Shown here in pieces: positions 1 to 64,000 of a DNA stretch of 64,000 nucleotides. The notes beneath the pieces are model-generated. The model did not search any database. It saw only the letters and a program-made list of their open reading frames with translations, and had not been told where the DNA came from. The number at the start of each line of letters is the position of its first letter. The first letter of the stretch is position 1. Made by a program: the position numbers and the translations under genes. The stretch is from positions 124,001 through 188,000 of IMG/VR virus record IMGVR_UViG_3300032334_001259, one strand, 5' to 3'.

Positions 1-2
1 TC

Positions 3-2801
3 AATAAAAGTGTCAACATCTGTTCCATTATCAGCAGTAACAACAATATCACCACTTGCTTGTGCGCCAGTATTGCTATTTTCTAGGTTTATTTGTGTAT
101 AGTTATTAGTATTACCGCTAAATTGAGCCACTACGTTAGCAAGTGGAGTATAACCAGTTTGACCAGCATAAAGTGCATTCATACCAGTTACTGGTAAACC
201 GTAGAAAATACCACCTTGTGTATAAACATTTGCGGTTATAGCATTGATATTACCAGTAACAATTAAGTTACCAGCAATATATGCATTACCATTACCACCA
301 CTTGTTGTTGTTAAAAGACTAGTAAATACAGCACTATTTGGAACGTTAGCACCTATTGCACCATTTAAGTAACCAATAACTTGGCCCGCACTGTTTAAGT
401 TTCCAACAGAAGCATTGCCTGTTACTGTTAAACTATTCAATGTGCCAATTGAAGTAATGTTTGGTTGACTAGAACTAACACTAGCGATAGTTCCTTCAAG
501 AATTGTATTTGTATTACCAATCTGTCCAGCACTTACTGCATTTACACTTATGTTACCAGTGAGAGTCATACTTGCACCACTAATCGTAGCGCCAGCATTA
601 CCAATAGTTCCTGCATTTAAAGTAGGAGCAGCAACAGTTCCCTGTGATGTAATAGTGCTACTTGTTGTAAGAGTAGTAAATGCACCAGTAGATGCAGTTC
701 CATTACCAATTGGAGTATTTTGGATTGCAGCAGCATAGATGTTACCACCAACACCCATACCACCATAAATTACAGCAGCACCAGTTGTTGTTGATGTTGA
801 TGTGTTGCCACTATAAGCAATGATATTACCAAGTTTTACAGTATCATATATTAGATACGCATTTGCAAGATCAACAGTTGTGCTTGGTTCTGATCGAAGA
901 TTACTGAATACATACCATGCATTGTCTATGTGATTTCTTACAATACCAGTATGGTTATACCCAACAGCAGCATCGTATTTGTGGCTGTAGAAACCTATTT
1001 CATAGTTATAATTGGTAAAACCCGATACCGCAAGGTATAATAGCGGAGCATTGGCAACAAGCGAAGTACTTCCAAGACTTGTAAGATTAGCAACAGTTAA
1101 GTTACCCGCAATATAAGAGTCACCGCCAGCGTAGAAACCGCCAGTTATTTGTAATGCACCTTGACCACTGCCATAGCTGTTTGCTGTTCCTGTTAGTGTT
1201 GCAGTCGAGGCAGTAATTGCCGCACCAGTATTACCAATAGTGCCAGCATAAACTGCTACACCATTAAATGTGTTAGCATTTACGGCACCGCTGACAGTTA
1301 GAGATGATAAAGTACCAAGACTTGTAATATTCGGTTGACTTGGTGTAGCACTACCAATAGTGCCTTCAAGTATAGTAGTTGTGTTACCGATTTGACCAGC
1401 ACTAACAGCGTTTACACTTACGTTACCAGTAAGAGTCATACTAGCACCGCCGAATGTAGCACCACTATTACCGATTGAACCAGCATTTAATGTTGCAGCG
1501 TTAAGTGTACCATTAACGGTTGCAGTTGTGAATACACCAGTATTAGGTGTGTTGGCACCAATTGCACCAGTTATATAACCAATGTGTTGACCGCCACCAG
1601 TAGAAGTAAAATTATCTGCTTTTAAATCATTATTAACGGTAGTTGTACCAGTATCAGCACCAATGCTAACTGTTGTTGCTGCTCCACCAATGTTTACAGT
1701 TGTAGTGTTTGCATTAAAGACAGATGCAGTGCCAGTAGAACTTGTATCAATTGTTGGATTTGCGCCATTCATCAATACTTGTGTAGTATTTGGTAAGTTT
1801 AAGGTTGCATTTTTAATAGTTACTAGACCAGATGTGGCACCAATATTAATATTAGTAGCAGCACCAGCAAAATTCATTGTTGTTGCAACATTATCATATA
1901 AACTTTGTGTAGTTTGACTACCAATAAGGAAAGGATTAGCAATATTTGCTGTTCCACTTGTAGCACCCATTTTAAGTGCAGTAGCAGCACCAGCAAAATT
2001 CATTGTTGTTGCAACAGTGTTAAACAAAGTAACAGCAGTTGAAGAACTAACGATAGTTGGATTTCTTAATGTCAACGAGCCAGATGTTGCACCCATTGAT
2101 AGTGCAGTTGCAGCTTGGAAAGCGTTCACTGTGGTAGAAACAGTATTGAATACGGTTGCAGTCGTTTGATCAGTTACGATAGTTCCATTGCCTTGCATAG
2201 AAATGCCAGTTCCAACTACCAATGCACCACTAACACCAGCACCACCAGTCACAACCAACGCACCAGTTGTTGTATTTGTAGATGCAGTTCCACTTGCAGC
2301 CCAAATATTTCCACTTGATGTTATTGTGCTGCTTGTATTAAGAGTAGTTAAACTTGCACTACCAATTGTAGCATTACTTGCAGCTAATCCATAAACTTGT
2401 AAATTTGCAAAACCACTATTGTTTATTATTCCAAATGTAGTACTTGCAGTACTTTGTGTCGTATATTGTAATTGAAACTGTTGAGCATTTTCTTCCCAAA
2501 TAAATGCTACGTTAGTTGAACTACCACGACCCATAATCATACCAAGATCATATGCAGGCACACCAGTAGCATTTCGATTAATGCTAAACATTGGATCAGC
2601 AATTACAAGATTTGTGGTATCAATTGTAGTAGTATTACCACTGATTGTGAGATTTCCAATGGTCATATTACCTGTATAGGTAAAATTATCGCTTAAAAGA
2701 CCACCACTAATAGACTTTGTAACAACCTTTGCATCAGCATAGATATCACTATTATAAACTTGGTTATTACGTATACGTGTAAGGGATGGTGGTAAGGCCA
2801 T
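3..2801 (-). CDS. Long tail-fibre/virion structural protein, partial (>933 aa, runs off left edge)
   Basis: Not in ORF track. ATG at 2801 (MALPPSLTRIRNNQVYNSDI) with GGAG RBS and TATAAATA upstream; frame open to position 3. Gly/Asn/Thr-rich, with ~42-aa ATTMNFAGAAT repeats and modules shared with neighbouring fibre genes. Confidence 0.85.
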   Translation of the reverse strand, partial: MALPPSLTRIRNNQVYNSDIYADAKVVTKSISGGLLSDNFTYTGNMTIGNLTISGNTTTIDTTNLVIADPMFSINRNATGVPAYDLGMIMGRGSSTNVAFIWEENAQQFQLQYTTQSTASTTFGIINNSGFANLQVYGLAASNATIGSASLTTLNTSSTITSSGNIWAASGTASTNTTTGALVVTGGAGVSGALVVGTGISMQGNGTIVTDQTTATVFNTVSTTVNAFQAATALSMGATSGSLTLRNPTIVSSSTAVTLFNTVATTMNFAGAATALKMGATSGTANIANPFLIGSQTTQSLYDNVATTMNFAGAATNINIGATSGLVTIKNATLNLPNTTQVLMNGANPTIDTSSTGTASVFNANTTTVNIGGAATTVSIGADTGTTTVNNDLKADNFTSTGGGQHIGYITGAIGANTPNTGVFTTATVNGTLNAATLNAGSIGNSGATFGGASMTLTGNVSVNAVSAGQIGNTTTILEGTIGSATPSQPNITSLGTLSSLTVSGAVNANTFNGVAVYAGTIGNTGAAITASTATLTGTANSYGSGQGALQITGGFYAGGDSYIAGNLTVANLTSLGSTSLVANAPLLYLAVSGFTNYNYEIGFYSHKYDAAVGYNHTGIVRNHIDNAWYVFSNLRSEPSTTVDLANAYLIYDTVKLGNIIAYSGNTSTSTTTGAAVIYGGMGVGGNIYAAAIQNTPIGNGTASTGAFTTLTTSSTITSQGTVAAPTLNAGTIGNAGATISGASMTLTGNISVNAVSAGQIGNTNTILEGTIASVSSSQPNITSIGTLNSLTVTGNASVGNLNSAGQVIGYLNGAIGANVPNSAVFTSLLTTTSGGNGNAYIAGNLIVTGNINAITANVYTQGGIFYGLPVTGMNALYAGQTGYTPLANVVAQFSGNTNNYTQINLENSNTGAQASGDIVVTADNGTDVDTFI
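1854..2016 (-). repeat. Intragenic 126-bp-period repeat (ATTMNFAGAAT unit)
   Basis: agtagcagcaccagcaaaattcattgttgttgcaaca is identical at 1854 and 1980; degenerate units flank both sides. Confidence 0.9.
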
Positions 2802-2820
2802 TTAGAAAACTCCGCAAGTA

Positions 2821-2828
2821 TATTTATA
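2821..2828 (-). promoter_or_regulatory. T4-type late promoter TATAAATA
   Basis: Exact T4 gp55 consensus ~20 nt upstream of the ATG at 2801. Confidence 0.75.
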
Positions 2829-2849: not shown

Positions 2850-4052
2850 TCAGTATTTGCCAATAACTAAAGAGGAGTTAATTCCACCAAATGCAAAGTT
2901 ACTTGTCAGTGCATAATCTATGTTCATGTTGCGACCAGTGTTAGGAATTACATCCATATCACACTCTGGGTCTGCTGTTGTAAAGTTTATAGTAGGCGGT
3001 GCAAAACTGTTTTGAATAGATTTAATTGTAATGATTGCTTCAATCGCACCAGTTGCCACTAACATATGCCCATGTATTGGTTTTGTAGAAGATATTGGTA
3101 GTGAATCTGCATATTTTCCAAATATTTGTCTTATACCAGCAACTTCATTTTTATCATTTAATTTTGTTCCAGTTCCATGAGCATTTATGTAATTAATATC
3201 ACCTAAAGCTAAATTAGAATCTTCTAATGCACTTTGCATTGATTTAATAAGACCTAAATTATCTGGCTGAACTAAATGAAATGCATCATTTGATGTACCG
3301 TAACCTAAAATATATGCTTGTGGTTTTACCCCTCTTGCTAAAACATCACTTTCACGTTCTAAAATAAGCATACCACTGCCTTCACCCAATACAATACCAT
3401 CTCTATCAATACTGAATGGTTTAATTGTAGTTGTGCTTAATGCGTTCATATATTCCCACGCACGCATTACCCAAGGTTGAAGACTTGCTTCAGTTGCACC
3501 AACAATAGCACGATCAATTATTCCTGCTCTTATAAGTTGAAAAGCTAATCCTATTGCTTGATTACCAGCAGAACAACCAGAACCTATTGGATAACTTGGT
3601 CCATAAATTTTATTTTCTATACAAATATAACTTATTGCGGCATTAGTCATAGCACGAGGTATAGTGAATACATCATTAGAGTGTGATTCAGCATTTAATT
3701 TTGTAATAAAATTATAAATTGATTCTGCGGCAGGAAATCCATTACCTAATATTATACCTGTTCTACTATCACTTAATTCTTCTTGTGAAATTTTACTATC
3801 TGCAATTGCTTCACGTGTTGCGATAGCAGCGTATGCAGAAAACAAATCTATACGAGTCTGTCTTGTAAAATAATCAGTATGAACAAAATTTTCGATTTTG
3901 GCTGCAATTTTAATTTTGTTTTTTAGATTATATTGATGTCCAATGGGTTTAATACTGCTTTGGTTATTAACAACAGCTTGCCATAATGGGTCAACACCTA
4001 CACCACATGCAGTAATAGCACCCATACCACTAATAACGATATTTGATTTCAT
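2850..4052 (-). CDS. fabF: Beta-ketoacyl-ACP synthase II (FabF/NodE-like)
   Basis: VISGMG start; catalytic Cys (GSGCSAG), His (INAHGTGT), His (TKPIHGHML); PFSIDRDGIVLGEG; SNFAFGG end. Confidence 0.95.
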   Translation of the reverse strand: MKSNIVISGMGAITACGVGVDPLWQAVVNNQSSIKPIGHQYNLKNKIKIAAKIENFVHTDYFTRQTRIDLFSAYAAIATREAIADSKISQEELSDSRTGIILGNGFPAAESIYNFITKLNAESHSNDVFTIPRAMTNAAISYICIENKIYGPSYPIGSGCSAGNQAIGLAFQLIRAGIIDRAIVGATEASLQPWVMRAWEYMNALSTTTIKPFSIDRDGIVLGEGSGMLILERESDVLARGVKPQAYILGYGTSNDAFHLVQPDNLGLIKSMQSALEDSNLALGDINYINAHGTGTKLNDKNEVAGIRQIFGKYADSLPISSTKPIHGHMLVATGAIEAIITIKSIQNSFAPPTINFTTADPECDMDVIPNTGRNMNIDYALTSNFAFGGINSSLVIGKY

Positions 4053-4060
4053 AAAAATAT

Positions 4061-4660
4061 TTAAGAGTTATTAAGAGAAATATAAACTTTTTCAACCCAA
4101 AATTCTGCAATAGCTGCATCTACCGCAGGCATTACATCTGCTTCTCTATATACACAAGCAATAGGTTCAAGAGCTTTATGTATTTGACCATTTATTTCTA
4201 GATCAACATTAGAAAAATAGTATCTACCTGTTTTTAAACGAAATGGTTGTCCACTTGGTATACGCCAAACTTTATCCTTTACAATTTCATTTTCAGTATT
4301 ATTAATAAGTTCACGTTGTGTAGCAGGATATATGCAAAAAATACTTGAATTATCTTCAGTAGCAGTTGATACAACACGATCAACATCATAATCACCATTT
4401 GGACTTATTATAATTCCATGACGTAATCTTGAAATATAAGGTGATTCAGTATATTCAGTAGCTACCTTTTCTCCGTTTAGATAACCATCAACATTAACCC
4501 AACCATTTATAAGAATATGTCGAGAGATAGTAATGTCTTTACCTATACCACGATATGAAAATGATTGATCAATTACATCACCAGCATTTTCAAATGTAAC
4601 CTTTGCTAATTGCATAGGAAAATTACTAATATGAATTGTATTACCTGTAATAATACTCAT
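4061..4660 (-). CDS. Hypothetical protein (199 aa)
   Basis: ORF coupled by ATGA overlap to the upstream gene; no recognised motif. Confidence 0.75.
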   Translation of the reverse strand: MSIITGNTIHISNFPMQLAKVTFENAGDVIDQSFSYRGIGKDITISRHILINGWVNVDGYLNGEKVATEYTESPYISRLRHGIIISPNGDYDVDRVVSTATEDNSSIFCIYPATQRELINNTENEIVKDKVWRIPSGQPFRLKTGRYYFSNVDLEINGQIHKALEPIACVYREADVMPAVDAAIAEFWVEKVYISLNNS

Positions 4661-5019
4661 AGAATTGTGATGCCTGTCATGTTTCCAGTATCGCCATCAG
4701 GAGATGTATAAGTTGTTACATTTATCAAATCAGCAATTGGAAAATTATAAACCTTACCAATTTCTGACTTTGCTGCGGTAACAACATCCTCGTTCTTTTT
4801 ACTTTGTTCTTTAAGATATTTTTGGTGTGCAATAACTGCACCTTGTTTTGCAATTTGTGCAAGCGCATCGCTCAAATCATTTGGGTTGTAATTATGAATA
4901 TCAAAACTGTATTTTTCACTTTCATCAACACTCATATCACTTGCATCAGTTGTAAAACTGACAACTAAACTATGATTTTCTTCATTATATTCATGAACTT
5001 TTACGGTTAATGTATCCAT
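4657..5019 (-). CDS. Hypothetical tail-fibre-associated protein (120 aa)
   Basis: AAGGA RBS; directly follows the adhesin gene. Confidence 0.7.
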   Translation of the reverse strand: MDTLTVKVHEYNEENHSLVVSFTTDASDMSVDESEKYSFDIHNYNPNDLSDALAQIAKQGAVIAHQKYLKEQSKKNEDVVTAAKSEIGKVYNFPIADLINVTTYTSPDGDTGNMTGITIL

Positions 5020-5028
5020 TTTAATTCC

Positions 5029-5850
5029 TTAACTACTTCCACCAAGTCTTGTTCCAGTAACAACCCATGTTGCATAGGCTATACCGTTGATATATTTACC
5101 AGCAGCACCACCTGATCTACCATTTCCACTTGTAGAACCAGCTTGTCCAGGACCACCGCCAGATGCTCCTCCAGCACCACCAGATGTTCTTGTACCTGCA
5201 CTACCACCATTAGCACCGCCAGCACCAGGATCATAACCAGCACCGCCGCCACCACCAGTTCCATTATAACTACTGCCACCACCTAAACAACTACCATAAG
5301 TTGTTCCACCGTCAGTTGCACCTCCGCCACCGCCACCACCAGCAAGTGTGCCATTATTTGTAATGTTTACAGGAGACTGTAACAATAATGCATTACCACC
5401 AGGAGATCCACTACCGCCAGCACCACCAGTACCGTTACCGCCAGCACCACCAGTCCCTATGATAAAACCATTATTGATTAAATTAACAGTATCACCAGCA
5501 GCAAATCCAGTAATAGTCAGTGCATATGAACCAGTAGAACTACTACCAACATAAATTCCACTATCAATAGTTAAATTTACTTTTGTAAAATTAGCTACAT
5601 AACCGCTTACCGCAGCTGGATTTAAAGTATAATTTTTTGTATCAACCGAGATTGTTAAATCAACAGTAACTTTATTTTGTGTTCCACGAAACTCACTAAA
5701 ATTTAAATCAGTAGTATCAAAAGTGCCAATAGTTAAAGTTGATGGTTTATAATATGAAACACCACGATAAGCTGAAATAGCATTACCCAACTGGAATTCA
5801 GTATTAATATTTGCATTAAGGGCAACTTTACCAGTTAACGAAATTGTCAT
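5029..5850 (-). CDS. gp38: T2/S16 gp38-like glycine-rich tail-fibre adhesin
   Basis: INNGFIIGTGGAGG, GGNALLLQSPVNITNNGTLAGGGGGGG and GGAAGKYING...W...GTRLG resemble the gp38 beta-helix plus polyglycine sandwich; downstream of a fibre with an S74 chaperone. Confidence 0.7.
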   Translation of the reverse strand: MTISLTGKVALNANINTEFQLGNAISAYRGVSYYKPSTLTIGTFDTTDLNFSEFRGTQNKVTVDLTISVDTKNYTLNPAAVSGYVANFTKVNLTIDSGIYVGSSSTGSYALTITGFAAGDTVNLINNGFIIGTGGAGGNGTGGAGGSGSPGGNALLLQSPVNITNNGTLAGGGGGGGATDGGTTYGSCLGGGSSYNGTGGGGGAGYDPGAGGANGGSAGTRTSGGAGGASGGGPGQAGSTSGNGRSGGAAGKYINGIAYATWVVTGTRLGGSS

Positions 5851-5851
5851 T

Positions 5852-6205
5852 TTAAGTCCAAGTTATTTTTATTCCGCCATTGGTGCCATTGCCACCAGCA
5901 GCACCAATATTATAATTTATAACTGTGCCAGCAGGTATTTGTCCACCAGTATAAACTACTTTTATATATGCGCCAGCACCGCCTGCTCCACCACCTGCAC
6001 CACCAGCATATCCAGTTGTGCCACTACCATTTCCGCCTACACCAACATTTGCATTAGTAGCACTTGCAGTAGTAGATGTGCCACTTGCAGTTCCAATTAC
6101 ACCACTATTACCATTAAGGAATGTAAAACTTTTTGGATTAGGTATAAATGGTGTTATACCTACATCTATCGTTCCGCCACTGCCACCTGCTCCGTATTGT
6201 GCCAT
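5852..6205 (-). CDS. Glycine-rich protein, C-terminal half of a split Gly-rich adhesin domain
   Basis: ATG at 6205 overlaps the upstream TGA (TGATG); GGAGAYIKV..PAG..YNIGAAGG..GGIKITW is the usual second half of phage Gly-rich domains. Confidence 0.7.
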   Translation of the reverse strand: MAQYGAGGSGGTIDVGITPFIPNPKSFTFLNGNSGVIGTASGTSTTASATNANVGVGGNGSGTTGYAGGAGGGAGGAGAYIKVVYTGGQIPAGTVINYNIGAAGGNGTNGGIKITWT

Positions 6206-6834
6206 CAATATACTCCAGTATCACCAAATCTATCAACAATATCACCATAACCATTTGGTTGTGATGTCTGTGTATATCCAACTGGCACATCATCTCTTGT
6301 AAAAAAGTATGTAGTTCCACCACTGCTATTTTGCACACCAAATGATTGTAAATTATCTTTAGGACCACGATCACCCACATCTACTGAAAGAGGTGGAGGA
6401 GGAACAGGAACTTTTCCACCATCACCACCTTTACCACCACCAGCAGTATAATCTGCAGTAACTGTTCCACCACTTATTGGTTGGTAGTTAGAGATACTTG
6501 TGTCTCCGCCTTTTGCACCATCACTACCATTAGAACCACCGCCGCCGCCACCAGCACCCCATATTTCTATAGTAATTGTATTTCTATAAAGTGGAACGAC
6601 AAAACTGCCACTACCAGAACTATTACTGAATAACACACCAGCAGTTGCAGGATCATTTGGTTGTTTACCATAAAAATCGCTTGATTTAATAGTGCCACTA
6701 TTAAAGTAACCAAATAATAGATTACCTGGATAATACCATTTGGTACCACGATAATTGTTAAAATCATCACCTAACCCAAATACGTCACTTATAATATCAG
6801 TGCTTACCGCACCAGAGTTAGGGACAAAAGCCAT
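6205..6834 (-). CDS. Glycine-rich adhesin-like protein, N-terminal half
   Basis: N-terminus resembles that of the gp38-like gene; GSFVVP..TITIEIWGAGGGGG begins the Gly-rich domain. Confidence 0.7.
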   Translation of the reverse strand: MAFVPNSGAVSTDIISDVFGLGDDFNNYRGTKWYYPGNLLFGYFNSGTIKSSDFYGKQPNDPATAGVLFSNSSGSGSFVVPLYRNTITIEIWGAGGGGGGSNGSDGAKGGDTSISNYQPISGGTVTADYTAGGGKGGDGGKVPVPPPPLSVDVGDRGPKDNLQSFGVQNSSGGTTYFFTRDDVPVGYTQTSQPNGYGDIVDRFGDTGVY

Positions 6835-6838
6835 TCAA

Positions 6839-8692
6839 TTACCTCGCTGCTTTTAATGCCTCGACCTCTGCACTTAATTCCTTGATTGCTTGAATTAGAA
6901 GTGGAACAAGTTTATCATATTGTACAGTAAGATAATTTTCACCACTCTTGCTACTACCGTCTTCTGCAATATCAAATGGTGCTGCTTTAATGACTTGCGG
7001 AGCAACTTGTGCAATTTCTTGTGCAAGAACACCAATATGCTCGTTGTTATCACCTACACCCATTGTAAATGCGAGTTCATTTGGTCGATAAGTGACACCA
7101 CGAATTGCTTTAACTTTATCAAGTGCATTTGGTATTTCAACAATATCTGTTTTTAAACGTTGGTCGGAATAAAATGCAACGATATCTTGTGTAGCAAGTA
7201 TACCACCTGTTACACTTAAGTTTGCATTGTTAAATGTAACACTACTATTACCAGCAAGATTTGCACTATCAGTATAAATTGCAACACGACCAGCAGCACC
7301 ACCACCAGCTACAGGTGTTGGAATTGTATACCAATTTAAGTTACTGCTACCGTCAGTAATAAGAGCTTGTCCACTACTACCGCCAGCAATTTGCACATTA
7401 CCAACATTACCTAATATTACTTTATATGTGCTTGTTGGATTAAATGTAACTGTTCCATTTGCAAAACCTGCTGCACCGCTAACCTGTAATGCAGTAAGTG
7501 TTCCAACGGTTGTAATATTTGTTTGTGTTGCTGTGCTGATAGTTCCAGTTAATGTTGCACTACTATTACCAATAGTGCCCGCCATTACATAATTTGCATA
7601 AACATTACCATTATTACTGCTACCATTAGCAATTAAGTTACCAACATAAACATTTCCTGTAAAAGCATTATTTGGTCCACCAACAATAATGTTACCAACA
7701 AAACCCGCACCACCTGATACCTGAAGTGCGCCAGTTGTTGTACTATATGCGGGTGATGTGCCACTTATGACTGCAATTTCATTACTTGTTACAACATCCA
7801 AATCACCAAGAACAATCAAGTTACCGTTAATTTGAACATCTGCATTAGCAAGAATGTCAAGTGCATCTACTACAGCACCGCTACCATTACGTGTTCTTAA
7901 ACGTATAATACCATTGTTAAGAGTATTATCCATACGAAGTTCATTACTGTAAACAGTAAATGCACCTTGTCCAGTGGTTCCAATATTGATACCACTGTTA
8001 TTTGTAACACTTAAAATACCAACTGTACCAGTGTTTTGGTCATTACGCATAAAGCTACTACCGCTGACACCATTAAGTGCGGCACTATCACTAGCTTGAC
8101 CAACAAATTTATTATTGCTTACAAAAGCAGTTGATGCAATATTAAAACCTGGTGATATTGTGCTAAAACCACTGATTGTTGTTGAAGGTGTAAATGTTGC
8201 ATCTTTACTTAAAATAGCATAACGAGTGTTATTAATCTTCATGCTTATAACATCGTGACTACCAGCAAGAGTGTCAACAATACTCTCACTAACAACTTGA
8301 CCAGCACCACCAAGTGGTCCAACAACCACCCAACCCGTTCCATTATATACATTAAGTTGTTGGTTAGCACTATCAAACCATAAATCACCTGCAACGCTAC
8401 TTGTAGGCGCAGATGCACTGTTAGTTGCACTTGCAATGTTCTTAAAAATTACACCGTTATAAACTTGTAGAGCACCTTTTGTAGTGTTATACCAAATCTG
8501 TCCAACAATTGGATTGCTTGGTTGACTACCACTTGCAAAATTTTCCAACATACTTAAGAAATTTTGATCAAGATACTGACCATAATTGGGGTAATTTTTA
8601 CCAACAAGTGAAAGACTTGTGCTGTTATCTATTGTTCCATCGGCAATAACGATTGAATTAGCACCATTTGAATATGTAATGGTATAAGACAT
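6839..8692 (-). CDS. Tail fibre with C-terminal peptidase S74 intramolecular chaperone
   Basis: SDQRLKTDI...ALDKV..IRGVTY...GVLAQEI...YDKLVPLLIQAIKEL; N-terminal LVGKNY..YG...NF...LENFA fibre-attachment motif. Confidence 0.85.
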   Translation of the reverse strand: MSYTITYSNGANSIVIADGTIDNSTSLSLVGKNYPNYGQYLDQNFLSMLENFASGSQPSNPIVGQIWYNTTKGALQVYNGVIFKNIASATNSASAPTSSVAGDLWFDSANQQLNVYNGTGWVVVGPLGGAGQVVSESIVDTLAGSHDVISMKINNTRYAILSKDATFTPSTTISGFSTISPGFNIASTAFVSNNKFVGQASDSAALNGVSGSSFMRNDQNTGTVGILSVTNNSGINIGTTGQGAFTVYSNELRMDNTLNNGIIRLRTRNGSGAVVDALDILANADVQINGNLIVLGDLDVVTSNEIAVISGTSPAYSTTTGALQVSGGAGFVGNIIVGGPNNAFTGNVYVGNLIANGSSNNGNVYANYVMAGTIGNSSATLTGTISTATQTNITTVGTLTALQVSGAAGFANGTVTFNPTSTYKVILGNVGNVQIAGGSSGQALITDGSSNLNWYTIPTPVAGGGAAGRVAIYTDSANLAGNSSVTFNNANLSVTGGILATQDIVAFYSDQRLKTDIVEIPNALDKVKAIRGVTYRPNELAFTMGVGDNNEHIGVLAQEIAQVAPQVIKAAPFDIAEDGSSKSGENYLTVQYDKLVPLLIQAIKELSAEVEALKAAR

Positions 8693-8713
8693 AAAATTGG
8701 ACTCCGTTAGGAA

Positions 8714-8719
8714 TATTTA
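8714..8719 (-). promoter_or_regulatory. Late promoter TAAATA
   Basis: CATAAATA in a short intergenic gap, followed by GGAG RBS. Confidence 0.65.
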
Positions 8720-8737
8720 TGCAGTAATAGCCACTTA

Positions 8738-10885
8738 TTATACTGGTATGTAAATGTTGCTTACTTTAAAGTTTGTGTTAGCTGTTGTGGTTGCCCAAAG
8801 CCTTACATTTCCACTATAAATGTTAGCTGATAATGTAAAAAATTGTGAGTTAGTTGCAATAATATTATATGTTGTTACATTTGCAGTAAAACCATTATGA
8901 ACAATCATAGCTTCTACTGATTGGAAATAATTACTTGTGGTATTTGTTCCACTTACTAGATATTTTGCAGTTCTATAAATTGATGGGTCAAAGCTATCAA
9001 TTATACTTGTTGTATTATTAACTGAAATGTTGCCAACATTTGCAACAATTGCAGAACTTAAATTTAAAGTATTAAAGATAGCAGTATTAGATTGTGTTAA
9101 TTCACTAACAGTTACACTATTTGCAATGCTAGTAATTTTTTGTAATCCAGCATCATTATGTATATAAATGCGTGAATTATCATTGCTTATAGTATTGACT
9201 GATGTAGAAGGGGTATATTGTCTTGCTTCGATAATATCAGTGCTGATAGGTGCTTCTGTAAAGGTAAGCACATTACCATTTACAGTATAGCTTGATGTTG
9301 GAATCTGTAAAACACCATTAACGCTAACAAGTGTTCCTTGTGTTGTATTATTTTGACTTAGTATAAAGTCAACTTGAGAACCATTACCAGTAAATTGGTC
9401 ACTGGTAACTACAGTTGTTCCTTCAAGACCAACTGCTTCCCAAATAGTTCCTGTATAAACTTCTAAATAATTATAACTTGTATTCCAACGAATCATACCT
9501 GGTGTTGAATAAGTTGGGTATTCACCACTATTTCCCACTGGAACTTGTAGAGCAGTTTTACTATTAACGTTAACAATACCAGTTCCAGTTGGTGTTAAGA
9601 AAATGTTACCATCAGTTGCCTGACCAGTAATATAATTTGTATAAACGTTTGCATTTACATTGGTTGATACAATACTATTAGTAATATTAAGATTTTGAGC
9701 ACTTATATTTGCATTGCTTATAACATAACTGCTATTAATATTACCTGTAATAAGATTTGCACTTGTTATATTGCCAGCAACATTAAGTGAAACAAGAGTT
9801 CCTGTGCTTGTAATATTTGGCTGACTTGAACTTAAACTAGCAATAGTTCCTTCAAGTATAGTATTTGTATTACCTATCTGACCTGCACTTACAGCATTTA
9901 CGCTTATATTTCCTGTAAGAGTCATACTTGCACCACTATGAACAGCGCCAGCATTACCAATAGTGCCAGCGTTAATTGTAGGTGCAGAAATTGTTCCAAT
10001 AGATGTTAGACTAGTTAGTGTTCCAAGACTTGTAATGTTTGGTTGACTTGCACTTACACTAGCAATTGTGCCTTCAAGTATAGTGTTTGTATTACCAATT
10101 TGAAATGCACTTACTGCTCTTGAACTAATATTTCCAGTTACTGTTAAACTAGTTAATGTTCCCAGTGATGTAATATTTGGTTGGCTTGCACTTACGCTTG
10201 CAATAGTTCCTTCAAGAATGGTGTTTGTATTACCAATTTGACCAGCTGCAATAGCATTTGTTGTAACATTACCAGTAACACTTAAACTTGTTAATACACC
10301 AAGACTATTAATATAAGGTTGATTGTTTGTCAGAACATAACCAACTAAATTGGTAATAGCGTTTCCATTAATGTTTACATTATTATAAAAGGTAGGAACA
10401 CTTACAAAACCAAAAGTTACTTGATTATTAGTAACATAAACATTCATCTGGCTTGTATTACCAAAGAATGTTAGGGTTTCATAATTGATACCAACGTTGT
10501 CAGTTCTGGTTCCATCACTGATTGTAAGGTTAGGTTCAGCAGTAGCAATAGCAGTATCAACATAAAGTTTGTTTGCGGCATCTGCTGTATGAACTGGTGT
10601 AGCAACATTTGCAATTCGCAAATTATTAGCACTTATATTACCAGAAATGGCGGTTAAAACAAGATTACCAACAAGACTTGTAATTTGGTTATTGTTTATA
10701 TAGATATTACTGGTTGTAAAACTACCATTAACAGTAAGCGTATTGCCTGGTATAGTGTTATAAATGCCAACACGACGATTAACAACATCAAAATATACAA
10801 GATCAGTATCAATTTGCAGATCTGTGCCATTACGCAACAGATTGTCTTTGAGCATCGGACCTGCAACTTTACCAAGAACTGCCAT
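8738..10885 (-). CDS. Virion structural/fibre protein with internal repeats (715 aa)
   Basis: Three ~41-aa QIGNTNTILEGTIASVSASQPNITSLGTLTSL repeats; P.G.IR.N motif; FTGNG..F beta module; C-terminal YRTAKYLV domain. Confidence 0.8.
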   Translation of the reverse strand: MAVLGKVAGPMLKDNLLRNGTDLQIDTDLVYFDVVNRRVGIYNTIPGNTLTVNGSFTTSNIYINNNQITSLVGNLVLTAISGNISANNLRIANVATPVHTADAANKLYVDTAIATAEPNLTISDGTRTDNVGINYETLTFFGNTSQMNVYVTNNQVTFGFVSVPTFYNNVNINGNAITNLVGYVLTNNQPYINSLGVLTSLSVTGNVTTNAIAAGQIGNTNTILEGTIASVSASQPNITSLGTLTSLTVTGNISSRAVSAFQIGNTNTILEGTIASVSASQPNITSLGTLTSLTSIGTISAPTINAGTIGNAGAVHSGASMTLTGNISVNAVSAGQIGNTNTILEGTIASLSSSQPNITSTGTLVSLNVAGNITSANLITGNINSSYVISNANISAQNLNITNSIVSTNVNANVYTNYITGQATDGNIFLTPTGTGIVNVNSKTALQVPVGNSGEYPTYSTPGMIRWNTSYNYLEVYTGTIWEAVGLEGTTVVTSDQFTGNGSQVDFILSQNNTTQGTLVSVNGVLQIPTSSYTVNGNVLTFTEAPISTDIIEARQYTPSTSVNTISNDNSRIYIHNDAGLQKITSIANSVTVSELTQSNTAIFNTLNLSSAIVANVGNISVNNTTSIIDSFDPSIYRTAKYLVSGTNTTSNYFQSVEAMIVHNGFTANVTTYNIIATNSQFFTLSANIYSGNVRLWATTTANTNFKVSNIYIPV

Positions 10886-25582: not shown

Positions 25583-25631
25583 TTGTGAAATCCTTGTAGA
25601 ATATTTATGGATATATGCGGTGTTTTAATTA

Positions 25632-36876: not shown

Positions 36877-37725
36877 TTAATCATTAAAACCAAAATCACC
36901 ACCGCTACCGCCGCCTCTTATGGCGTTGTCTGTTTGACGGGTATAACTTGGATTAAGTCCATTTGCTTCAAGGATGTCGTCACGTAAATGTTGATTTCTC
37001 TTCTCAACATTAAGGACTCTAGTAAAACTATTGGTAATAGTAGCAGTATAATAAGCAAAAGGATTATTAGATTTGCTTTCGTCAAATTGCAACCCTACCT
37101 GTGATAACTGTAACAATGCTTGGCTTCGCATTTCATCATTATATGTATAACCACGCCAGTTGCCTTTACTACCATACCGTTCACATAGCTTGATAAACAT
37201 ACGTGCTAGATTATTGGTAATCTTGCCATGGTCACGATTAAAGCAACCATTCTCTAGTCCACCCTCCCAATGTGATTTACCACAGCATATAAGTTCACCT
37301 GCTTCATTATATCTATAATGTTGGAATGGTGGGAAGTTTACTTTGACGTGGTGGTCAGCAGTTGTCTTAAGACTTTTCTTTCTGCCAGGTGCCAATGGAA
37401 TATGATCCCATGTAGTGATTCTAAAAATTACTTCTGTTTTTGGAATTGCTTGCCAATCAACTGTATGTTGGTCTAATTTTGTTTTCTTACCATCAACGTT
37501 TGATGCTTCCCATGCTTGCTTTGCCAACCTATCAGCACGTGCACGTTTGGCTTCTGCAACAGTCTTCTGATTAATTTTAGTAATACTTGGAAGAATCAAA
37601 TCATAAACACAATCTTCGGGTGTTAAAAATTCACAGTAAGTATTTTTACTTCTAGCAATTTCTTTAAGAAGTTCTTTATTTGTAAGATATGGAGTTCTTT
37701 TGGTTGGTGTTTTTGTTATTGTCAT
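36877..37725 (-). CDS. gp55: Late-transcription sigma factor (gp55-like)
   Basis: YLTNKELL, NWRGYTY.DEM, QFDESKSNNPFAYYT...NSF.R...EK. Confidence 0.88.
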   Translation of the reverse strand: MTITKTPTKRTPYLTNKELLKEIARSKNTYCEFLTPEDCVYDLILPSITKINQKTVAEAKRARADRLAKQAWEASNVDGKKTKLDQHTVDWQAIPKTEVIFRITTWDHIPLAPGRKKSLKTTADHHVKVNFPPFQHYRYNEAGELICCGKSHWEGGLENGCFNRDHGKITNNLARMFIKLCERYGSKGNWRGYTYNDEMRSQALLQLSQVGLQFDESKSNNPFAYYTATITNSFTRVLNVEKRNQHLRDDILEANGLNPSYTRQTDNAIRGGGSGGDFGFND

Positions 37726-45300: not shown

Positions 45301-46176
45301 CAACCAAGAGACAATACACCAGTCGTAGAAACTTCTGATAGTCGTGATATGAAGTCAACTGCTGTACGTTCACCGATGAATCCAAATGATGCATTTGGTG
45401 ATACTATTGCTAATCCTAAAGATACTGCAACTGGTCGTTATTATGATCCACGTACTGGTGAAGTAGTATCAACATACTCTTATAGTGGTGGTGCACCTGC
45501 TGGTGCAAATCCTGGTGATATAGCAACAGGTGGTTATGGTGCACCTGCACCAAACACTGATTTCTATCCTGAAGATTTCTACAGCAGAACAGCAAAAAAT
45601 TATGATACAATTTATGATCCAAGAACTAACGATGTTGTTCAAGTAGAAAAGCCATCACAATCAGCATATTACTATTATGATGATGTCCATCCTGCAAGTA
45701 GTTCAGTTTATAATCCATATGAAGATTCAGCTAATACTGAATTAAAGAATGTAACTCAAAGTTCAACATATTATGAACGTGATTATCTTGACCCAGGTCA
45801 AAACAGAAACAGTGATATAACAACCGAAAGTAATTTTGATGCGGCAAGTAAAGCTGCAAATCTTGGAAGTGATAATAATCTTGGTATTGCGGCACCAGAT
45901 GCGGCTGATGCACCACTGGCTGTAAACAATTATCAAACTACATATGATGTTCGCACAGGTGAAGTTGTTACAGTTGGTAGCAGTGGAACAGCAGTTCAAC
46001 CACCATCTGTATCAAATGTAAATGGTGTACGGCCAGAGTATGATCCATTAACAGGAAAATTAATTAACCAACCAATTACAGGTGCTAATAAACCACCTGG
46101 AACTGGTGGTGCAAACGGTGGACAAAAGACACCACAAGGAAGTTCACAAACAGGAGCAGGCGGTAAGTCCTGTTAA
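42379..46176 (+). CDS. gp5: Central spike (gp5/VgrG-like) with C-terminal peptidoglycan-hydrolase-like domains
   Basis: OB-fold DP...GRLQVYIP, GMWFVPPD...VLC.F..GD; GHT.VMDD beta-helix start; NNPGNL and Cys/His amidase-like segments. Confidence 0.8.
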   Translation: MTWFTEQETSKTAPNTKSEASAGNRINPGPYIGIVKNVVDPLYSGRLQVYIPDLGGDETDPTSYKSMMYATPFYGRTNIQDGSSFAGSPHSYGMWFVPPDIDNKVLCIFANGDPAKGYWFACIPDWPALHMVPGISGPVDGSSPAPVVDHFDNKDNPSNLSSVRTLDRYIHEYQQKTWEDQGLLQDPDRGPGRSSAQRETPSGVFGISTPGRPILDEDPQLYPDNLGFTSGGVKQKTPGQLMGVMGRKGGHTLVMDDGDANGNNQMFRIRSAAGHMILMNDTKEFLYIINSKGTAWVEMDAKGSINVYAESQMNIFAKDSFSLESSGAIKIKGKTVDILAENGLSLQGADVNVLGSGSTKIAGKQNLHLHSKKNTYLTGESCIQIKADGHIDLKASCHTINTADATKATEAAEVKNKPTNMPQHEPRNKGAGSLTASPTPNAKNNAATNPNNPYGQGNNFGSGGAQPNYGPQTNNVQPVVYNSGPQGSLQGQGSVYGSYKPDNYNGGGIDWTVAGTIAGAIAGIAFSGGSSYNVTNDADPKLSVGEAQNNPGNLPYNNTDTFAVGYNNNLAVYAKPEGGIAALALAFDALNIGVSTRSIDLIQGFLNAKSNVDPKVIDMTRYMHQNLGIVADDYVALYDPNTRIGWVAYAIQYIQGRLIYSYDQVVTGCALSLGISVTDFLMGIQPLTKPWQNNNGYNPLSGFVNPAQNNNIVQRGSSPLQTIGSAIGGGLIGGLIGSFIQGNQRSNQGGIVAVTDANSARRYLEANPNTPNGTVFQYPDGSTFTLGGGSVTYVDNGGYNVTNVQQYGGPTNEAIGSDIRFDGIINNGTQGSGGCATLAQTYAPNLGHTSTWSAGDSITNGTAQPGDVYATFAPGGSYTGQSGTCHTVIFNNYTYDNNGNINGAYVTEQYVGQPPHTAFYSASRTDKYEVFQNFKRVQSDTAPSGANVTQTQQYNNVTGQRTQQSYAQDSNPIPQPRDNTPVVETSDSRDMKSTAVRSPMNPNDAFGDTIANPKDTATGRYYDPRTGEVVSTYSYSGGAPAGANPGDIATGGYGAPAPNTDFYPEDFYSRTAKNYDTIYDPRTNDVVQVEKPSQSAYYYYDDVHPASSSVYNPYEDSANTELKNVTQSSTYYERDYLDPGQNRNSDITTESNFDAASKAANLGSDNNLGIAAPDAADAPLAVNNYQTTYDVRTGEVVTVGSSGTAVQPPSVSNVNGVRPEYDPLTGKLINQPITGANKPPGTGGANGGQKTPQGSSQTGAGGKSC

Positions 46177-46184
46177 ATATACAC

Positions 46185-50010: not shown

Positions 50011-53000
50011 ATGGCAAAACGTAAAAGTGAAAACTTTTTACCACAATCTTTTAGAACATTAAGCAATCGTAGATTTTTAAATGCCACTATAGATCCACTT
50101 ATACAAGAGCCAAGTCTTAAGAAGATGTATGGTTATATTGGACAACAGGACCAAAGTCCTGTGTTTGAAAAAGGTGACTATTACATTAATGAAAACGATA
50201 GCTATAGTCAGTTCTATCAATTAGAACCAGGTGTAGTAATCAAAAAACGCCAGTATGGAACTAACACTTATAAAGTAGATAATGTTTACAACTATGTTGA
50301 TTTATTAAACCAGATTGCAGCTGACGGTGGTATTAACAACAATCATGATAGATTGTTTAGTAATCGTTATTACAGTTATAATGGTTTTATTGACCTTGAT
50401 AAGTTAACAAACTATCGTCAGTATTATTGGGTGCCAGGCGGTCCACTTACAGTTGACGTAACTGCAGAAAATACACTTACACAAAAAGATTTTTATATTC
50501 ACCGTAACAGTTATGTTGCTAATAATCAAACTGAATTACAAAGTGCTGCACTTGGTGCAACTGGTTATAGTGTGGATGGTTACAACAATGTTATTAATCC
50601 TACACTTACGCTAGTTCGTGGTGGTAGTTATAATTTTTATGTAAATCAAGACACTGACTTCTGGATTCAAACTGAAATTGGTGTAGATGGTGTAAGTAGT
50701 GTACAGAATAATATTTCAACTCGTGATGTATTGGGTGTTTCTAATAATGGAGCAAAAAGTGGAACTATAACATTTACAGTTCCATTAAGCACTGCACAAG
50801 ATTATCTTATTAACTATCCAACAATTAGCCAAGCTGTTGATTTAATTGTTGATGATGTTACTTACGAAGAATTACAAGGACAAAATTACGATACATTTAT
50901 TCTATCAAACGGATTAGATGGTGTTCGTGCATTCGATGGAAAGTATATTGTTTTAACAAGCACAACTGGTTGGGGAGATATAGCATCTACACAATGGGGT
51001 GGTGTTTGGCGTATAAATGTAGGCAGTGATCCAGCTGCAGCCAATTATCGTTTAATGAATTTAACATATATTGCAGATTGGACAGTTTTAAACAAAGTAT
51101 TTGTTACTCAAGGTGATGTATATGGTCACGTTTATGCATACAAAGATTTATTTGGTGTTATTCAAAAATTTCCAACATTAAGTGCAGCACAAAGTGTTCT
51201 TTATTATGTTGATGCTACAAATCCTCTTGTGTACGGAACTATTCAGCTTGTTGATCCACAACCAAATAGTTTACTAAATGTTAATGATATACTTGGTCGT
51301 GAAAACTATACAAGTCCAAATGGTGTACAGTTTACAAGTGGACTTAAAGTAAAGTTCACTGGCATTGTCGTGCCTGCTGAATATCAAGGTAATGAATATA
51401 TTGTTGAAGGTGTAGGTAGCAGTATTAAACTTATTAAATATGCTGACCTTGTTACACCAGAAATAATTAATACTAATCTAGGTAGTAGTTTTGGTAATAG
51501 TCGTGGTTATGATGCTGATGGCACTGGTTTCGATGGAACTACAAATAGTCCAGAACAAAAAGATTATGTAACAATTAATCGTGCTAGTATTGATGGTAAT
51601 AGTTGGAGTCGTAACAATCGTTGGTTCCATCGTGATGTGCTGCAAGCAGCTGCTGATTATAATAATGTAAGTTATAGCTTTGACAGCAATCAACAAGCAA
51701 AGCGTCCTATTATTGAGTTTTTACCTAATATAAAACTTTACAACTATGGAACAAACTATGCTGGCAGTGTCACTTGTATAGACAGTGTTACAACAAGTGC
51801 TTTTGCACAAGTAGAGGGTTTTAACAGTTATGCTGTAAAGACTGATGGTGTTTATAATAGTGATGGTATACAATTATTGAATGGACTGTCAGTTATCTTT
51901 ACACAAGAAACTGATCCTGTAAAGCGTGCAACTCTTTATCGTGTGCAGAATAATAAAACACGTGCAAGTGCAACTTATAATATACTAACAAATGCTTTTA
52001 CTAACAGTGGTGTAAATTATCTTAACATAAACAATATTGCAAATCTTGCTGTTGGTCAGCATGTTACTGGTAGTGGTATCCCAAACTTTACTACTATTAC
52101 AAGTATTGATACTGTATTTGATCGTGTTTATATAAGCAATAATTTAACACAAGATGTTCCTGCAGGAACTACAATTACATTTGATAACAGTTATGATCAA
52201 ATACATCTTGTACCTATTAAAACATTTACCAATGGCGATACTGTTGTTGCTATGGAAGGTGTTGAGAATCAAGGTAATATGTTTTATTACTTGGATGGTG
52301 AGTGGATTCGTTCACAGATTCGTAACAGTCGTCCACAATTTCCACTATTTGATGTCATCGATAAAAATGGTTATAGTTTTGGTGATCAAACAGTTTATGC
52401 AAGTAGTGACTTTAGTGGTAGTGAACTATTTGGTTATGCAGTAGGAACTGGAACACGTGACAGTGAATTAGGGTTCCCACTTGTTTATAAGAGCATTGGT
52501 AATCTTGGTGACATTGTATTTGAAAACTATTATCAAACTGATACATTTCATTATAGTTTAAATCAAGTTGACCAAGAAGAAAACATTAATCAGGGTTTTG
52601 CAGCGGTTATTGTTGGTTGGAACAACTATACTCTTGCTAATGGTTGGTATCGTGTAAGTGATAAATCTAAACAATACATTACTAAAGTTTTCACTGCAAA
52701 TGCAGTTCAACTCAATAATTTTGATCTTGGTGTTGTTTATGATAACAGCTATTATGAAAATAATATATTCGTTTATGTAAATGGTTCACTACAATCAAAT
52801 TCAACATATGCATTACAGACAAGCAGTTTAACAAGTGTAGTTGTTTTTAATCAAGATTTAAATGTAAATGATCGTGTATTTGTTAAAATTTATGGAACAA
52901 GCACAGTGTACAAAGAAACATACACTATGCCACGCAATCTCACAAACAACAGTGAGAACACAGAATTTACAACTATTACGCTAGGTCAAGTTCGTAATCA

Positions 53001-63999: not shown

Positions 64000-64000
64000 A

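What the first reader, a model, noticed from the sequence alone, without database searches (positions are those of the whole stretch)
2850..4063. Intact NodE/FabF-like ketosynthase inside the tail-fibre cluster, with a possible late promoter
Seen: a complete Cys-His-His KAS II co-oriented among fibre and adhesin genes, with no ACP or other fab gene in the window. TAAATA (4058-4063) sits 5 nt before its ATG, the same geometry as at gp25. Knowledge: VMRAWEYMNALSTTTIKPFS..RDG lacks the usual FabF insertion before RPFD and resembles rhizobial NodE-type enzymes, which make unusual acyl chains. Inference: a phage-encoded acyl-chain elongation step late in infection, for acylating virion parts or remodelling the host envelope or receptor. 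The two unknown genes upstream (4061-5019) may be partners.
Basis: partly seen in the sequence, partly recalled or inferred. Interest (0 to 1): 0.75.

Follow-up and report, generated by a model that had tools for sequence, protein, structure and literature searches.

The report
Orphan NodE-like ketosynthase in jumbo phage
A freshwater jumbo phage carries an intact fatty-acid chain-extending enzyme as a small self-contained cassette between two tail-fibre genes; it looks like a late-expressed metabolic add-on that depends on the host's lipid machinery, with no sign that it belongs to the fibre itself.

Summary
Window 2850-4052 (-) encodes a 400-aa elongating ketosynthase with the Cys-His-His triad, the catalytic Lys and the gating Phe intact. 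It is under purifying selection (dN/dS about 0.16).

- **Not an artefact.** The same junctions occur on 9 other contigs.
- **Not housekeeping FabF.** It falls in a NodE-like superclade. Inside that, it belongs to an uncharacterised bacterial subfamily whose genes sit in ACP-KS-MaoC dehydratase operons. True NodE is a separate clade.
- **Nearest relatives.** These are ketosynthases of freshwater T4-like phages, where the gene sits in the replication region beside a glycosyltransferase. A "fabF" in freshwater pelagimyophages was already noted in 2020.
- **An insertion.** Sister jumbo phages have the identical fibre module, including homologues of both upstream genes, but no ketosynthase.
- **Alone in the genome.** The 338-kb genome has no ACP, PPTase, FabD, FabG/I, FabA/Z, MaoC, desaturase or PlsC.
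- **The promoter motif is real.** TAAATA-N5-ATG is conserved in all 8 orthologous loci and precedes 33 of 387 genes. That spacing predicts a leaderless late transcript.

Best reading: a late-expressed, host-dependent metabolic add-on gene. Virion acylation and partnership with the upstream genes are unsupported. One oddity remains: the jumbo-phage clade has lost ACP-docking basic residues.

The parts
2850..4052 (-). Ketosynthase gene, 400 aa. An orphan elongating KAS of the NodE-like superclade and the ACP-KS-MaoC subfamily. Catalytic residues are C160, H292, K324, H329 and F388.
   Evidence: dN/dS is 0.16.
4058..4064 (-). TTAAATA late-promoter-like motif, followed by 5 nt and then the ATG of the ketosynthase. 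This spacing predicts a leaderless transcript. Its TAA (4063-4061) doubles as the stop codon of the upstream gene.
   Evidence: Conserved in all 8 orthologous loci even though the spacer and the stop-codon position vary. It belongs to a class of 33 genes. A gp55-like late sigma factor is present.
2810..2828 (-). TATAAATA (2828-2821) followed by GGAG (2813-2810), a canonical T4-type late promoter with a Shine-Dalgarno site. It serves the large fibre gene that starts at 2800. This marks the downstream border of the ketosynthase cassette.
   Evidence: The same element directly follows the 180-aa gene in KS-less phages.
1..2800 (-). N-terminal part of a large fibre protein (1391 aa in L002). It runs off the start of the window.
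   Evidence: L002 11252-15427; similar to the 715-aa fibre.
4061..4660 (-). 199-aa protein with a bicupin-like fold. It belongs to the fibre module and is not tied to the ketosynthase.
   Evidence: pLDDT 86. Foldseek matches BacB, HutD and cupins, plus uncharacterised phage proteins. A 32%-identical homologue occurs in KS-less phages.
4657..5019 (-). 120-aa protein made of beta strands and a long helix. It has no known fold match and is not an ACP.
   Evidence: A 72%-identical 106-aa form occurs in KS-less phages.
5029..5850 (-). Glycine-rich gp38-like adhesin.
   Evidence: PF05268, E 4e-4, below the curated cut-off. The family is also listed on the orthologues at L133 and L135.
6839..8692 (-). 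Tail fibre with a C-terminal S74 intramolecular chaperone. It is preceded by TAAATA at 21 nt.
36877..37725 (-). gp55-like late sigma factor, the presumed reader of the TAAATA promoters.
   Evidence: phrog_12791, E 1.3e-78.

Best explanation
The gene is a stand-alone metabolic add-on: a ketosynthase ORF with its own late-promoter-like motif, inserted in the intergenic gap between a fibre-module gene and the late promoter of the next fibre gene.

**Origin.** It derives from a bacterial NodE-like subfamily whose members work with a dedicated ACP and a MaoC-type dehydratase. It shares one origin with the ketosynthase of freshwater T4-like phages.

**Proposed mechanism (inferred).** Late in infection the phage gp55-type RNA polymerase transcribes it, probably as a leaderless mRNA. 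The enzyme then condenses host malonyl-ACP with host acyl-ACP. Every other step (ACP, its phosphopantetheinylation, malonyl transfer, reduction, dehydration) is left to the host. The effect would be to sustain or redirect acyl-chain elongation for envelope lipids while host gene expression is shut down.

**Shown:** gene integrity, purifying selection, clade membership, insertion polymorphism, absence of partner genes, and motif conservation and enrichment.

**Inferred:** timing of expression, leaderless start, use of host ACP, and the physiological effect.
For: - **Enzyme integrity.** The catalytic residues are invariant and dN/dS is 0.16, like the neighbouring genes.
- **Phylogeny.** Jumbo and T4-like phage ketosynthases are sisters (96/84). 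Their bacterial sister group has 99/96 support. All lie inside the ACP-KS-MaoC subclade (100/100). Housekeeping FabF lies outside (100/99).
- **Bacterial context.** The bacterial relatives all show an ACP-KS-hotdog/MaoC arrangement.
- **Phage context.** T4-like phage loci carry the gene in the RNR-glutaredoxin-GT1 region.
- **Insertion.** KS-less sister phages have an otherwise identical module.
- **Synteny.** Junctions are conserved on 9 contigs.
- **No partners.** The genome holds no partner genes.
- **Promoter.** The motif statistics and its conservation support a late promoter. Genes of the same motif class include terminase, baseplate wedge and a virion protein. A late sigma factor is present.
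- **Long residence.** GC of the gene (33.7%) matches the genome (35.5%).
- **Literature.** fabF plus a desaturase were noted in freshwater pelagimyophages (PMC7029224).
Against: - There are no expression data. No RNA run was listed.
- The host is unknown. LD12 is only suggested, by analogy with LBVG_1 and by the phage's S21 gene.
- The jumbo-phage clade has replaced basic residues that, from memory of FabF-AcpP structures, dock ACP. FabF R206 is N203 here, and R127/K128 are H124/S125. All other clades keep Arg at the R206 position. Use of a standard ACP is therefore not assured.
- The bacterial relatives use a dedicated ACP, not the housekeeping one. That ACP may be absent from the host.
Confidence: 0.5

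Rival explanations
1. **Specialised envelope-lipid remodelling.** The enzyme completes or boosts a non-housekeeping host pathway, the ACP-KS-MaoC type. It would make an unusual acyl chain for an outer-membrane lipid or LPS. That could change the receptor surface, for example to exclude superinfection or to stop progeny sticking to cell debris.
For: - It belongs to the specialised subfamily, not to FabF.
- Bacterial homologues lie next to LptF/LptG, CDP-alcohol phosphatidyltransferases, glycosyltransferases and a PlsC acyltransferase.
- In T4-like phages the gene abuts or overlaps a GT1 glycosyltransferase.
- Its position in the host-range module of the jumbo phage fits a surface role.
Against: - The product of the bacterial operon is unknown.
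- The phage lacks the dedicated ACP and the dehydratase.
- It could not be tested whether the host has that operon.
- The jumbo phage's GT4 is not a detectable sequence homologue of the T4-like phages' GT1 in a direct pairwise BLASTP.
Confidence: 0.22
2. **The first reader's idea.** The enzyme supplies an acyl chain that is attached to a virion part (fibre or adhesin), with the two upstream proteins as partners.
For: - It is co-oriented within the fibre cluster and carries a late-type promoter.
- The 199-aa neighbour differs much more between KS-plus and KS-minus phages (32% identity) than the 120-aa neighbour does (72%).
Against: - Both neighbours occur without the ketosynthase.
- Neither is an ACP or an acyltransferase.
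- No PlsC-type acyltransferase was found in the genome.
- The orthologue in T4-like phages is far from structural genes.
- The complex prediction gave no answer.
Confidence: 0.06
3. **Changed carrier or non-canonical role.** After capture, the jumbo-phage enzyme shifted away from ACP. It might use CoA thioesters or another carrier, or act mainly by binding and sequestering host acyl-ACP.
For: - The stem branch of the jumbo clade is long (0.69, against 0.30 for the T4-like clade).
- Residues equivalent to R206, R127 and K128 are lost only in this clade.
Against: - The full catalytic set, including the decarboxylation histidines and the gate Phe, is invariant.
- Purifying selection acts on the gene.
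- The assignment of docking residues rests on memory of FabF-AcpP structures and was not tested here.
Confidence: 0.12
4. **Neutral passenger or assembly artefact.**
For: It lies in a variable, recombination-prone fibre region and is absent from sister phages.
Against: - Junctions are identical on 9 contigs from different samples.
- Protein identity is 71-100% across 12 clusters, with dN/dS 0.16.
- The upstream motif is conserved.
Confidence: 0.03

Closest known systems
"fabF" auxiliary gene of freshwater T4-like phages (pelagimyophage group PMP-D; Zaragoza-Solas et al. 2020, PMC7029224)
   Same: It is the sister clade, at 47-50% identity. It is also an orphan ketosynthase in a low-GC (about 34%) freshwater phage. 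Both types occur in the same lake sample, 3300010885.
   Different: The phage lineage differs: the major capsid protein here is 61-69% identical to PA5oct, GAP32 and Phosso jumbo phages. The genomic place differs: fibre module versus the replication region beside a GT1. The jumbo clade has lost the Arg equivalent to FabF R206. That the contigs found here are the published PMP-D group is inferred, not shown.
Bacterial ACP-KS-MaoC dehydratase operon ketosynthases (uncharacterised; named "nodulation protein E" by automatic annotation)
   Same: It falls in the same subclade with 100/100 support. It shares the SSTKP(I/V)HGH, HGTGT and FAFGG motifs and the short loop.
   Different: The phage gene has no adjacent ACP or dehydratase. 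Identity is at most 50%. The function of the bacterial operon is itself unknown.
NodE of rhizobia (works with the NodF ACP to make polyunsaturated acyl chains for Nod factor)
   Same: It lies in the same superclade, apart from FabF (100/99). It shares the 6-7-residue loop deletion and the HGTGT motif.
   Different: It is a separate clade, at 36.8% identity. There is no NodF and no nod gene context (one search shows the true arrangement).
Housekeeping FabF (KAS II)
   Same: Same fold, same catalytic residues and about the same length. The best solved-structure matches are FabF proteins, with E down to 1e-77.
   Different: It scores below the equivalog cut-off, 367 against 493.75 bits. It lies outside the FabF clade, has the shorter loop and sits in no fab cluster.
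T4 late promoters (TATAAATA read by gp55)
   Same: The TAAATA core is the same and a gp55-like sigma factor is encoded. The motif is depleted genome-wide yet concentrated upstream of structural genes.
   Different: A second class lies only 5 nt from the ATG with no Shine-Dalgarno site, which implies leaderless mRNAs. The first two positions of the octamer are relaxed; at the ketosynthase the sequence reads CTTAAATA.

Membership tests
Elongating beta-ketoacyl-ACP synthase (thiolase fold, KAS I/II type) | N- and C-terminal ketoacyl-synthase domains | tested here: met
   PF00109 at 128.7 bits and PF02801 at 103.7 bits, both over the 20.8-bit cut-off.
Elongating beta-ketoacyl-ACP synthase (thiolase fold, KAS I/II type) | Cys-His-His triad, catalytic Lys and gating Phe | tested here: met
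   C160, H292, H329, K324 and F388 are invariant in all clades.
Elongating beta-ketoacyl-ACP synthase (thiolase fold, KAS I/II type) | Basic ACP-docking patch (FabF R206, R127, K128; residue roles recalled from FabF-AcpP structures) | tested here: not met
   The equivalents here are N203, H124 and S125. Arg at the R206 position is kept in T4-like phage, bacterial sister, NodE and FabF rows.
Elongating beta-ketoacyl-ACP synthase (thiolase fold, KAS I/II type) | Condensing activity with malonyl-ACP | not testable with these tools
   Needs an enzyme assay.
Housekeeping FabF (TIGR03150 equivalog) | Score above the curated equivalog cut-off | tested here: not met
   367.1 bits against 493.75. The PRK07314 subfamily model gives 360 against 387.
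Housekeeping FabF (TIGR03150 equivalog) | Groups with FabF in a tree | tested here: not met
   FabF of E. coli and of alphaproteobacteria lies outside a branch with 100/99 support.
NodE | Orthology with rhizobial NodE | tested here: not met
   NodE of S. meliloti and R. leguminosarum forms its own 100/100 clade. Identity to the phage enzyme is 36.6-36.8%.
NodE | Adjacent NodF-type ACP and nod gene context | tested here: not met
   No ACP anywhere in the genome. The true context is nodABC-nodD-ACP-KS-nodL.
ACP-KS-MaoC operon ketosynthase subfamily (uncharacterised) | Membership of the subclade | tested here: met
   100/100 support.
ACP-KS-MaoC operon ketosynthase subfamily (uncharacterised) | Dedicated ACP upstream and MaoC or hot-dog dehydratase downstream | tested here: not met
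   Present in the bacterial loci L012, L130, L131 and L132. Absent from the phage.
T4-type late promoter | TATAAATA-like element enriched upstream of late genes, with a gp55-like sigma factor encoded | tested here: met
   107 of 193 TAAATA copies lie within 60 nt upstream of a start codon, with modes at 5 and 19 nt. gp55 homologue, E 1.3e-78. The motif is conserved at the ketosynthase in 8 loci.
T4-type late promoter | Transcription start about 6 nt downstream, late in infection | not testable with these tools
   No RNA run was listed.
Phage auxiliary metabolic gene / moron | Presence/absence polymorphism at a fixed intergenic site among related phages | tested here: met
   L133 and L134 lack the gene between the 180-aa gene and the fibre promoter. 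L002-L009 and L135 have it.

The most novel reading that the evidence does not exclude
After capture, the jumbo-phage ketosynthase was retooled. It lost the conserved ACP-docking arginine and neighbouring basic residues. It may now work with a different carrier or partner, possibly a phage protein of the fibre module, to make a lipid used at the cell surface or on the virion late in infection. It would be expressed from a leaderless late mRNA.
Probability: 0.1. Interest if true: 0.8.

Novelty: new member of a known kind. Interest (0 to 1): 0.45.

Why it matters
- **Lipid reprogramming by phages.** The gene adds to the case that phages of abundant freshwater plankton reprogramme host lipid synthesis. 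It shows that the phage "fabF" is really a member of a specialised, uncharacterised NodE-like subfamily, shared by two unrelated myophage lineages. Knowing what these enzymes make would shed light on both the phage strategy and the unknown bacterial ACP-KS-MaoC pathway.
- **Promoter architecture.** The analysis exposes a clear two-class late-promoter layout in this phage. One class, at 5 nt, predicts leaderless mRNAs and is directly testable.
- **Annotation caution.** Position inside a tail-fibre cluster is weak evidence of function, because such clusters are hot spots for inserted genes.

Tried and rejected
- **Cultured-phage records.** No DNA match. The protein hits are at most 38.6% identical and look mostly like unannotated bacterial-type contigs filed under phage names, judged from the record names. 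They were not used as phage relatives.
- **Single-protein scan of viral contigs.** It found only the jumbo clade. The T4-like clade came from the protein database and a second scan.
- **Bacterial genome scan.** No relative above 42% identity and no plausible donor or host genome.
- **RNA evidence.** No RNA run was listed.
- **Complex prediction.** The ketosynthase against the two upstream proteins gave "no answer". It is not evidence either way.
- **The 120-aa protein as a hidden ACP.** Rejected: no conserved serine, not a four-helix bundle and no Pfam hit.
- **The jumbo phage's GT4 against the T4-like phages' GT1.** No detectable pairwise similarity.
- **Intrinsic terminators around the gene.** None convincing.
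- **Relatives of a virus record.** These cannot be drawn. Host genomes such as LD12 could not be searched for the ACP-KS-MaoC operon.
- **Chimera idea.** Rejected on synteny across 9 contigs.

Full report
**What is there.** Window 2850-4052 on the minus strand is an uninterrupted 400-codon ORF. It matches both ketoacyl-synthase Pfam domains. Its best NCBIfam matches are FabF models, but below their cut-offs: TIGR03150 gives 367 against 493.75 bits, and PRK07314 gives 360 against 387. The best solved-structure matches are FabF proteins, with E down to 1e-77. Across 29 homologues the active-site Cys160, His292, Lys324, His329 and the FAFGG gate are invariant.

**The genome.** The window is bases 124001-188000 of a 338,435-bp virus record with direct terminal repeats.
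- It encodes T4-type major head, portal, baseplate hub, gp46/47-like nuclease and gp55-like late sigma proteins.
- Its major head protein is 61-69% identical to those of the jumbo phages PA5oct, GAP32, Vibrio 2.275.O and Sinorhizobium Phosso.
- The gene is found in freshwater and lake metagenomes.
- The phage encodes ribosomal protein S21. So does LBVG_1, a 318-kb Lake Biwa jumbo phage predicted to infect the LD12 lineage (bioRxiv 10.1101/655167).

The host assignment is only an analogy with that phage.

**Not an artefact, not a one-off.** Eight IMG/VR contigs and a 343-kb ENA contig carry the same gene order: S74 fibre, 209 aa, 117 aa, gp38-like adhesin, 120 aa, 199 aa, ketosynthase, large fibre. 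Ketosynthase identity among them is 73-100%. Pairwise dN/dS for the ketosynthase is 0.16, within the range of its neighbours at 0.13-0.24. Its GC content (33.7%) matches the genome (35.5%).

**It is an insertion.** A more abundant set of sister phages (L133, L134) has the same module, with a 106-aa homologue (72% identity) and a 180-aa homologue (32% identity) of the two upstream genes. In those phages the module runs straight into the late promoter and start of the large fibre gene, with no ketosynthase. The cassette therefore consists of the TTAAATA motif, the ORF and about 20 nt. It sits between the 180/199-aa gene and the CCTATAAATA...GGAG...ATG element of the next gene. Both upstream genes exist without the ketosynthase, which argues against obligate partnership.

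**The upstream genes.** The 199-aa protein is predicted with confidence (pLDDT 86) as a bicupin-like barrel. It resembles BacB, HutD and uncharacterised phage proteins. The 120-aa protein is built of beta strands and a long helix, with no fold match. It has no conserved serine of the ACP type. A complex prediction of the ketosynthase against both gave no answer.

**Which family.** In a careful tree:
- The jumbo-phage clade and a clade from freshwater T4-like phages are sisters (96/84).
- Next comes a bacterial group at 48-50% identity (99/96). One member, L131, lies on a 54% GC contig in an ACP-KS-MaoC operon.
- Then comes P0064, also in an ACP-KS-MaoC arrangement.
- All lie in a 100/100 subclade whose sampled bacterial members share that operon, twice beside LptF/LptG and lipid-head-group genes.
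- Rhizobial NodE, fetched from pSymA and from a nodABC-nodD-ACP-KS-nodL locus, is a separate 100/100 clade within the same superclade.
- Housekeeping FabF and FabB lie outside (100/99).

So the enzyme is "NodE-like" in features, but it is not NodE. The name "nodulation protein E" on many database relatives is automatic annotation.

**The other phage lineage.** In the T4-like phages the gene lies in a conserved stretch: RNR, glutaredoxin, WYL_2, a 111-aa gene, a GT1 glycosyltransferase, then the ketosynthase. This stretch is near the RNase H, PhoH, gp59 and gp32 genes. In one contig the ketosynthase overlaps the GT1 gene by 4 nt. Zaragoza-Solas et al. 2020 already listed fabF and a stearoyl-CoA desaturase as genes unique to freshwater pelagimyophages (PMC7029224). 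These contigs are probably that group. A phage-borne ketosynthase is therefore known in kind, though uncharacterised.

**It stands alone.** The whole genome has no match at E<=1 to ACP, FabD, FabG/FabI, FabA/FabZ or PPTase models. It has none to desaturase or PlsC, and only noise for MaoC. A six-frame search with an HMM of six ACPs, including NodF and the operon ACPs, found nothing better than E 0.19.

**The promoter claim.**
- TAAATA occurs only 193 times on both strands. Same-composition hexamers occur 547-836 times.
- 107 of those copies lie within 60 nt upstream of a start codon on the same strand.
- Their spacing has two sharp modes: 15-23 nt (mode 19, followed by a Shine-Dalgarno site) and 4-7 nt (mode 5, no Shine-Dalgarno site). 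The expectation is about 0.11 per offset.
- In the window the long-spacing class heads the fibre, portal and other structural operons. Early genes lack the motif.
- The 5-nt class has 33 genes. It includes terminase large subunit, the gp25-like baseplate wedge protein, a virion protein, a radical SAM enzyme and a GT4 glycosyltransferase.
- At the ketosynthase, TTAAATA-N5-ATG is conserved in all eight orthologous loci. The five spacer bases vary, and so does the position of the upstream stop codon.

From memory, T4 late promoters span -13 to -6. On that basis a 5-nt spacer places the transcription start on the A of the ATG, giving a leaderless mRNA. This step is inference. No RNA run could be listed to test it.

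**An unexpected difference.** Residues that (from memory of FabF-AcpP crosslinked structures) dock ACP are changed only in the jumbo clade. FabF R206 is N in 11 of 12 members and G in the other. R127/K128 are H/N/Y and variable. T4-like phage, bacterial sister, NodE and FabF rows keep Arg at the R206 position. The stem branch of the jumbo clade is also long, at 0.69. This may reflect adaptation to a particular host ACP, or a change of carrier.

**Verdict.**
- It is a real, late-promoter-equipped, NodE-like orphan ketosynthase.
- Its place among the fibre genes is best explained as insertion of an add-on gene in a recombination-prone region.
- It most likely acts on host acyl-ACP pools.

A role in specialised envelope lipids remains a live alternative. 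Virion acylation is unsupported.

Noticed in passing
whole genome G000; in the window e.g. 46174-46184, 8693-8737, 25583-25631: TAAATA is about 3-4 times rarer than same-composition hexamers. More than half of all copies lie just upstream of start codons, in two spacing classes (about 19 nt with a Shine-Dalgarno site, and 5 nt without). The 5-nt class predicts leaderless late mRNAs for 33 genes.
   Followed up: partly
G000:C1:331176-331328 (outside the window; L146): The phage encodes ribosomal protein S21 (PF01165, E 1.5e-16). So does LBVG_1, the Lake Biwa jumbo phage predicted to infect LD12. This hints at a SAR11-type freshwater host.
   Followed up: partly
window residues N203, H124 and S125 of the ketosynthase (about 3444-3446 and 3678-3683): The jumbo-phage clade alone has replaced the Arg equivalent to FabF R206 and the R127/K128 pair. 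Every other clade examined keeps the Arg.
   Followed up: partly
L133 and L134 (ENA lake metagenome contigs), 9001-9902: Abundant sister phages have the same fibre module without the ketosynthase. Their 180-aa gene is only 32% identical to the 199-aa gene here, while the 106/120-aa gene is 72% identical.
   Followed up: yes
L148:5066-7224; also L010 and L011: In freshwater T4-like phages the ketosynthase lies next to a GT1 glycosyltransferase. In one contig the two genes overlap by 4 nt, which suggests co-expression.
   Followed up: partly
window 5029-6834 (-): Three consecutive glycine-rich proteins (209, 117 and 273 aa). The last is gp38-adhesin-like. They vary far more between related phages than the flanking genes do.
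   Followed up: no
window 50011-64000 (+): A very long ORF, about 4898 aa in the genome, runs off the end of the window. It follows three genes of 1076-1265 aa, of which only the first was scanned and matched a virion structural protein family.
   Followed up: no
L012, L132, L131, L130 (bacterial loci): A widespread bacterial ACP-KS-(hot-dog)-MaoC operon has no known product. In the two loci L012 and L132 it lies beside LptF/LptG and phospholipid head-group genes, and automatic annotation often names its ketosynthase "nodulation protein E".
   Followed up: partly
G000:C1:270657-271775 and 308323-309324 (L143, L144): A radical SAM enzyme and a GT4 glycosyltransferase also carry the 5-nt TAAATA arrangement. 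Several non-structural genes therefore appear to be in the late regulon.
   Followed up: partly
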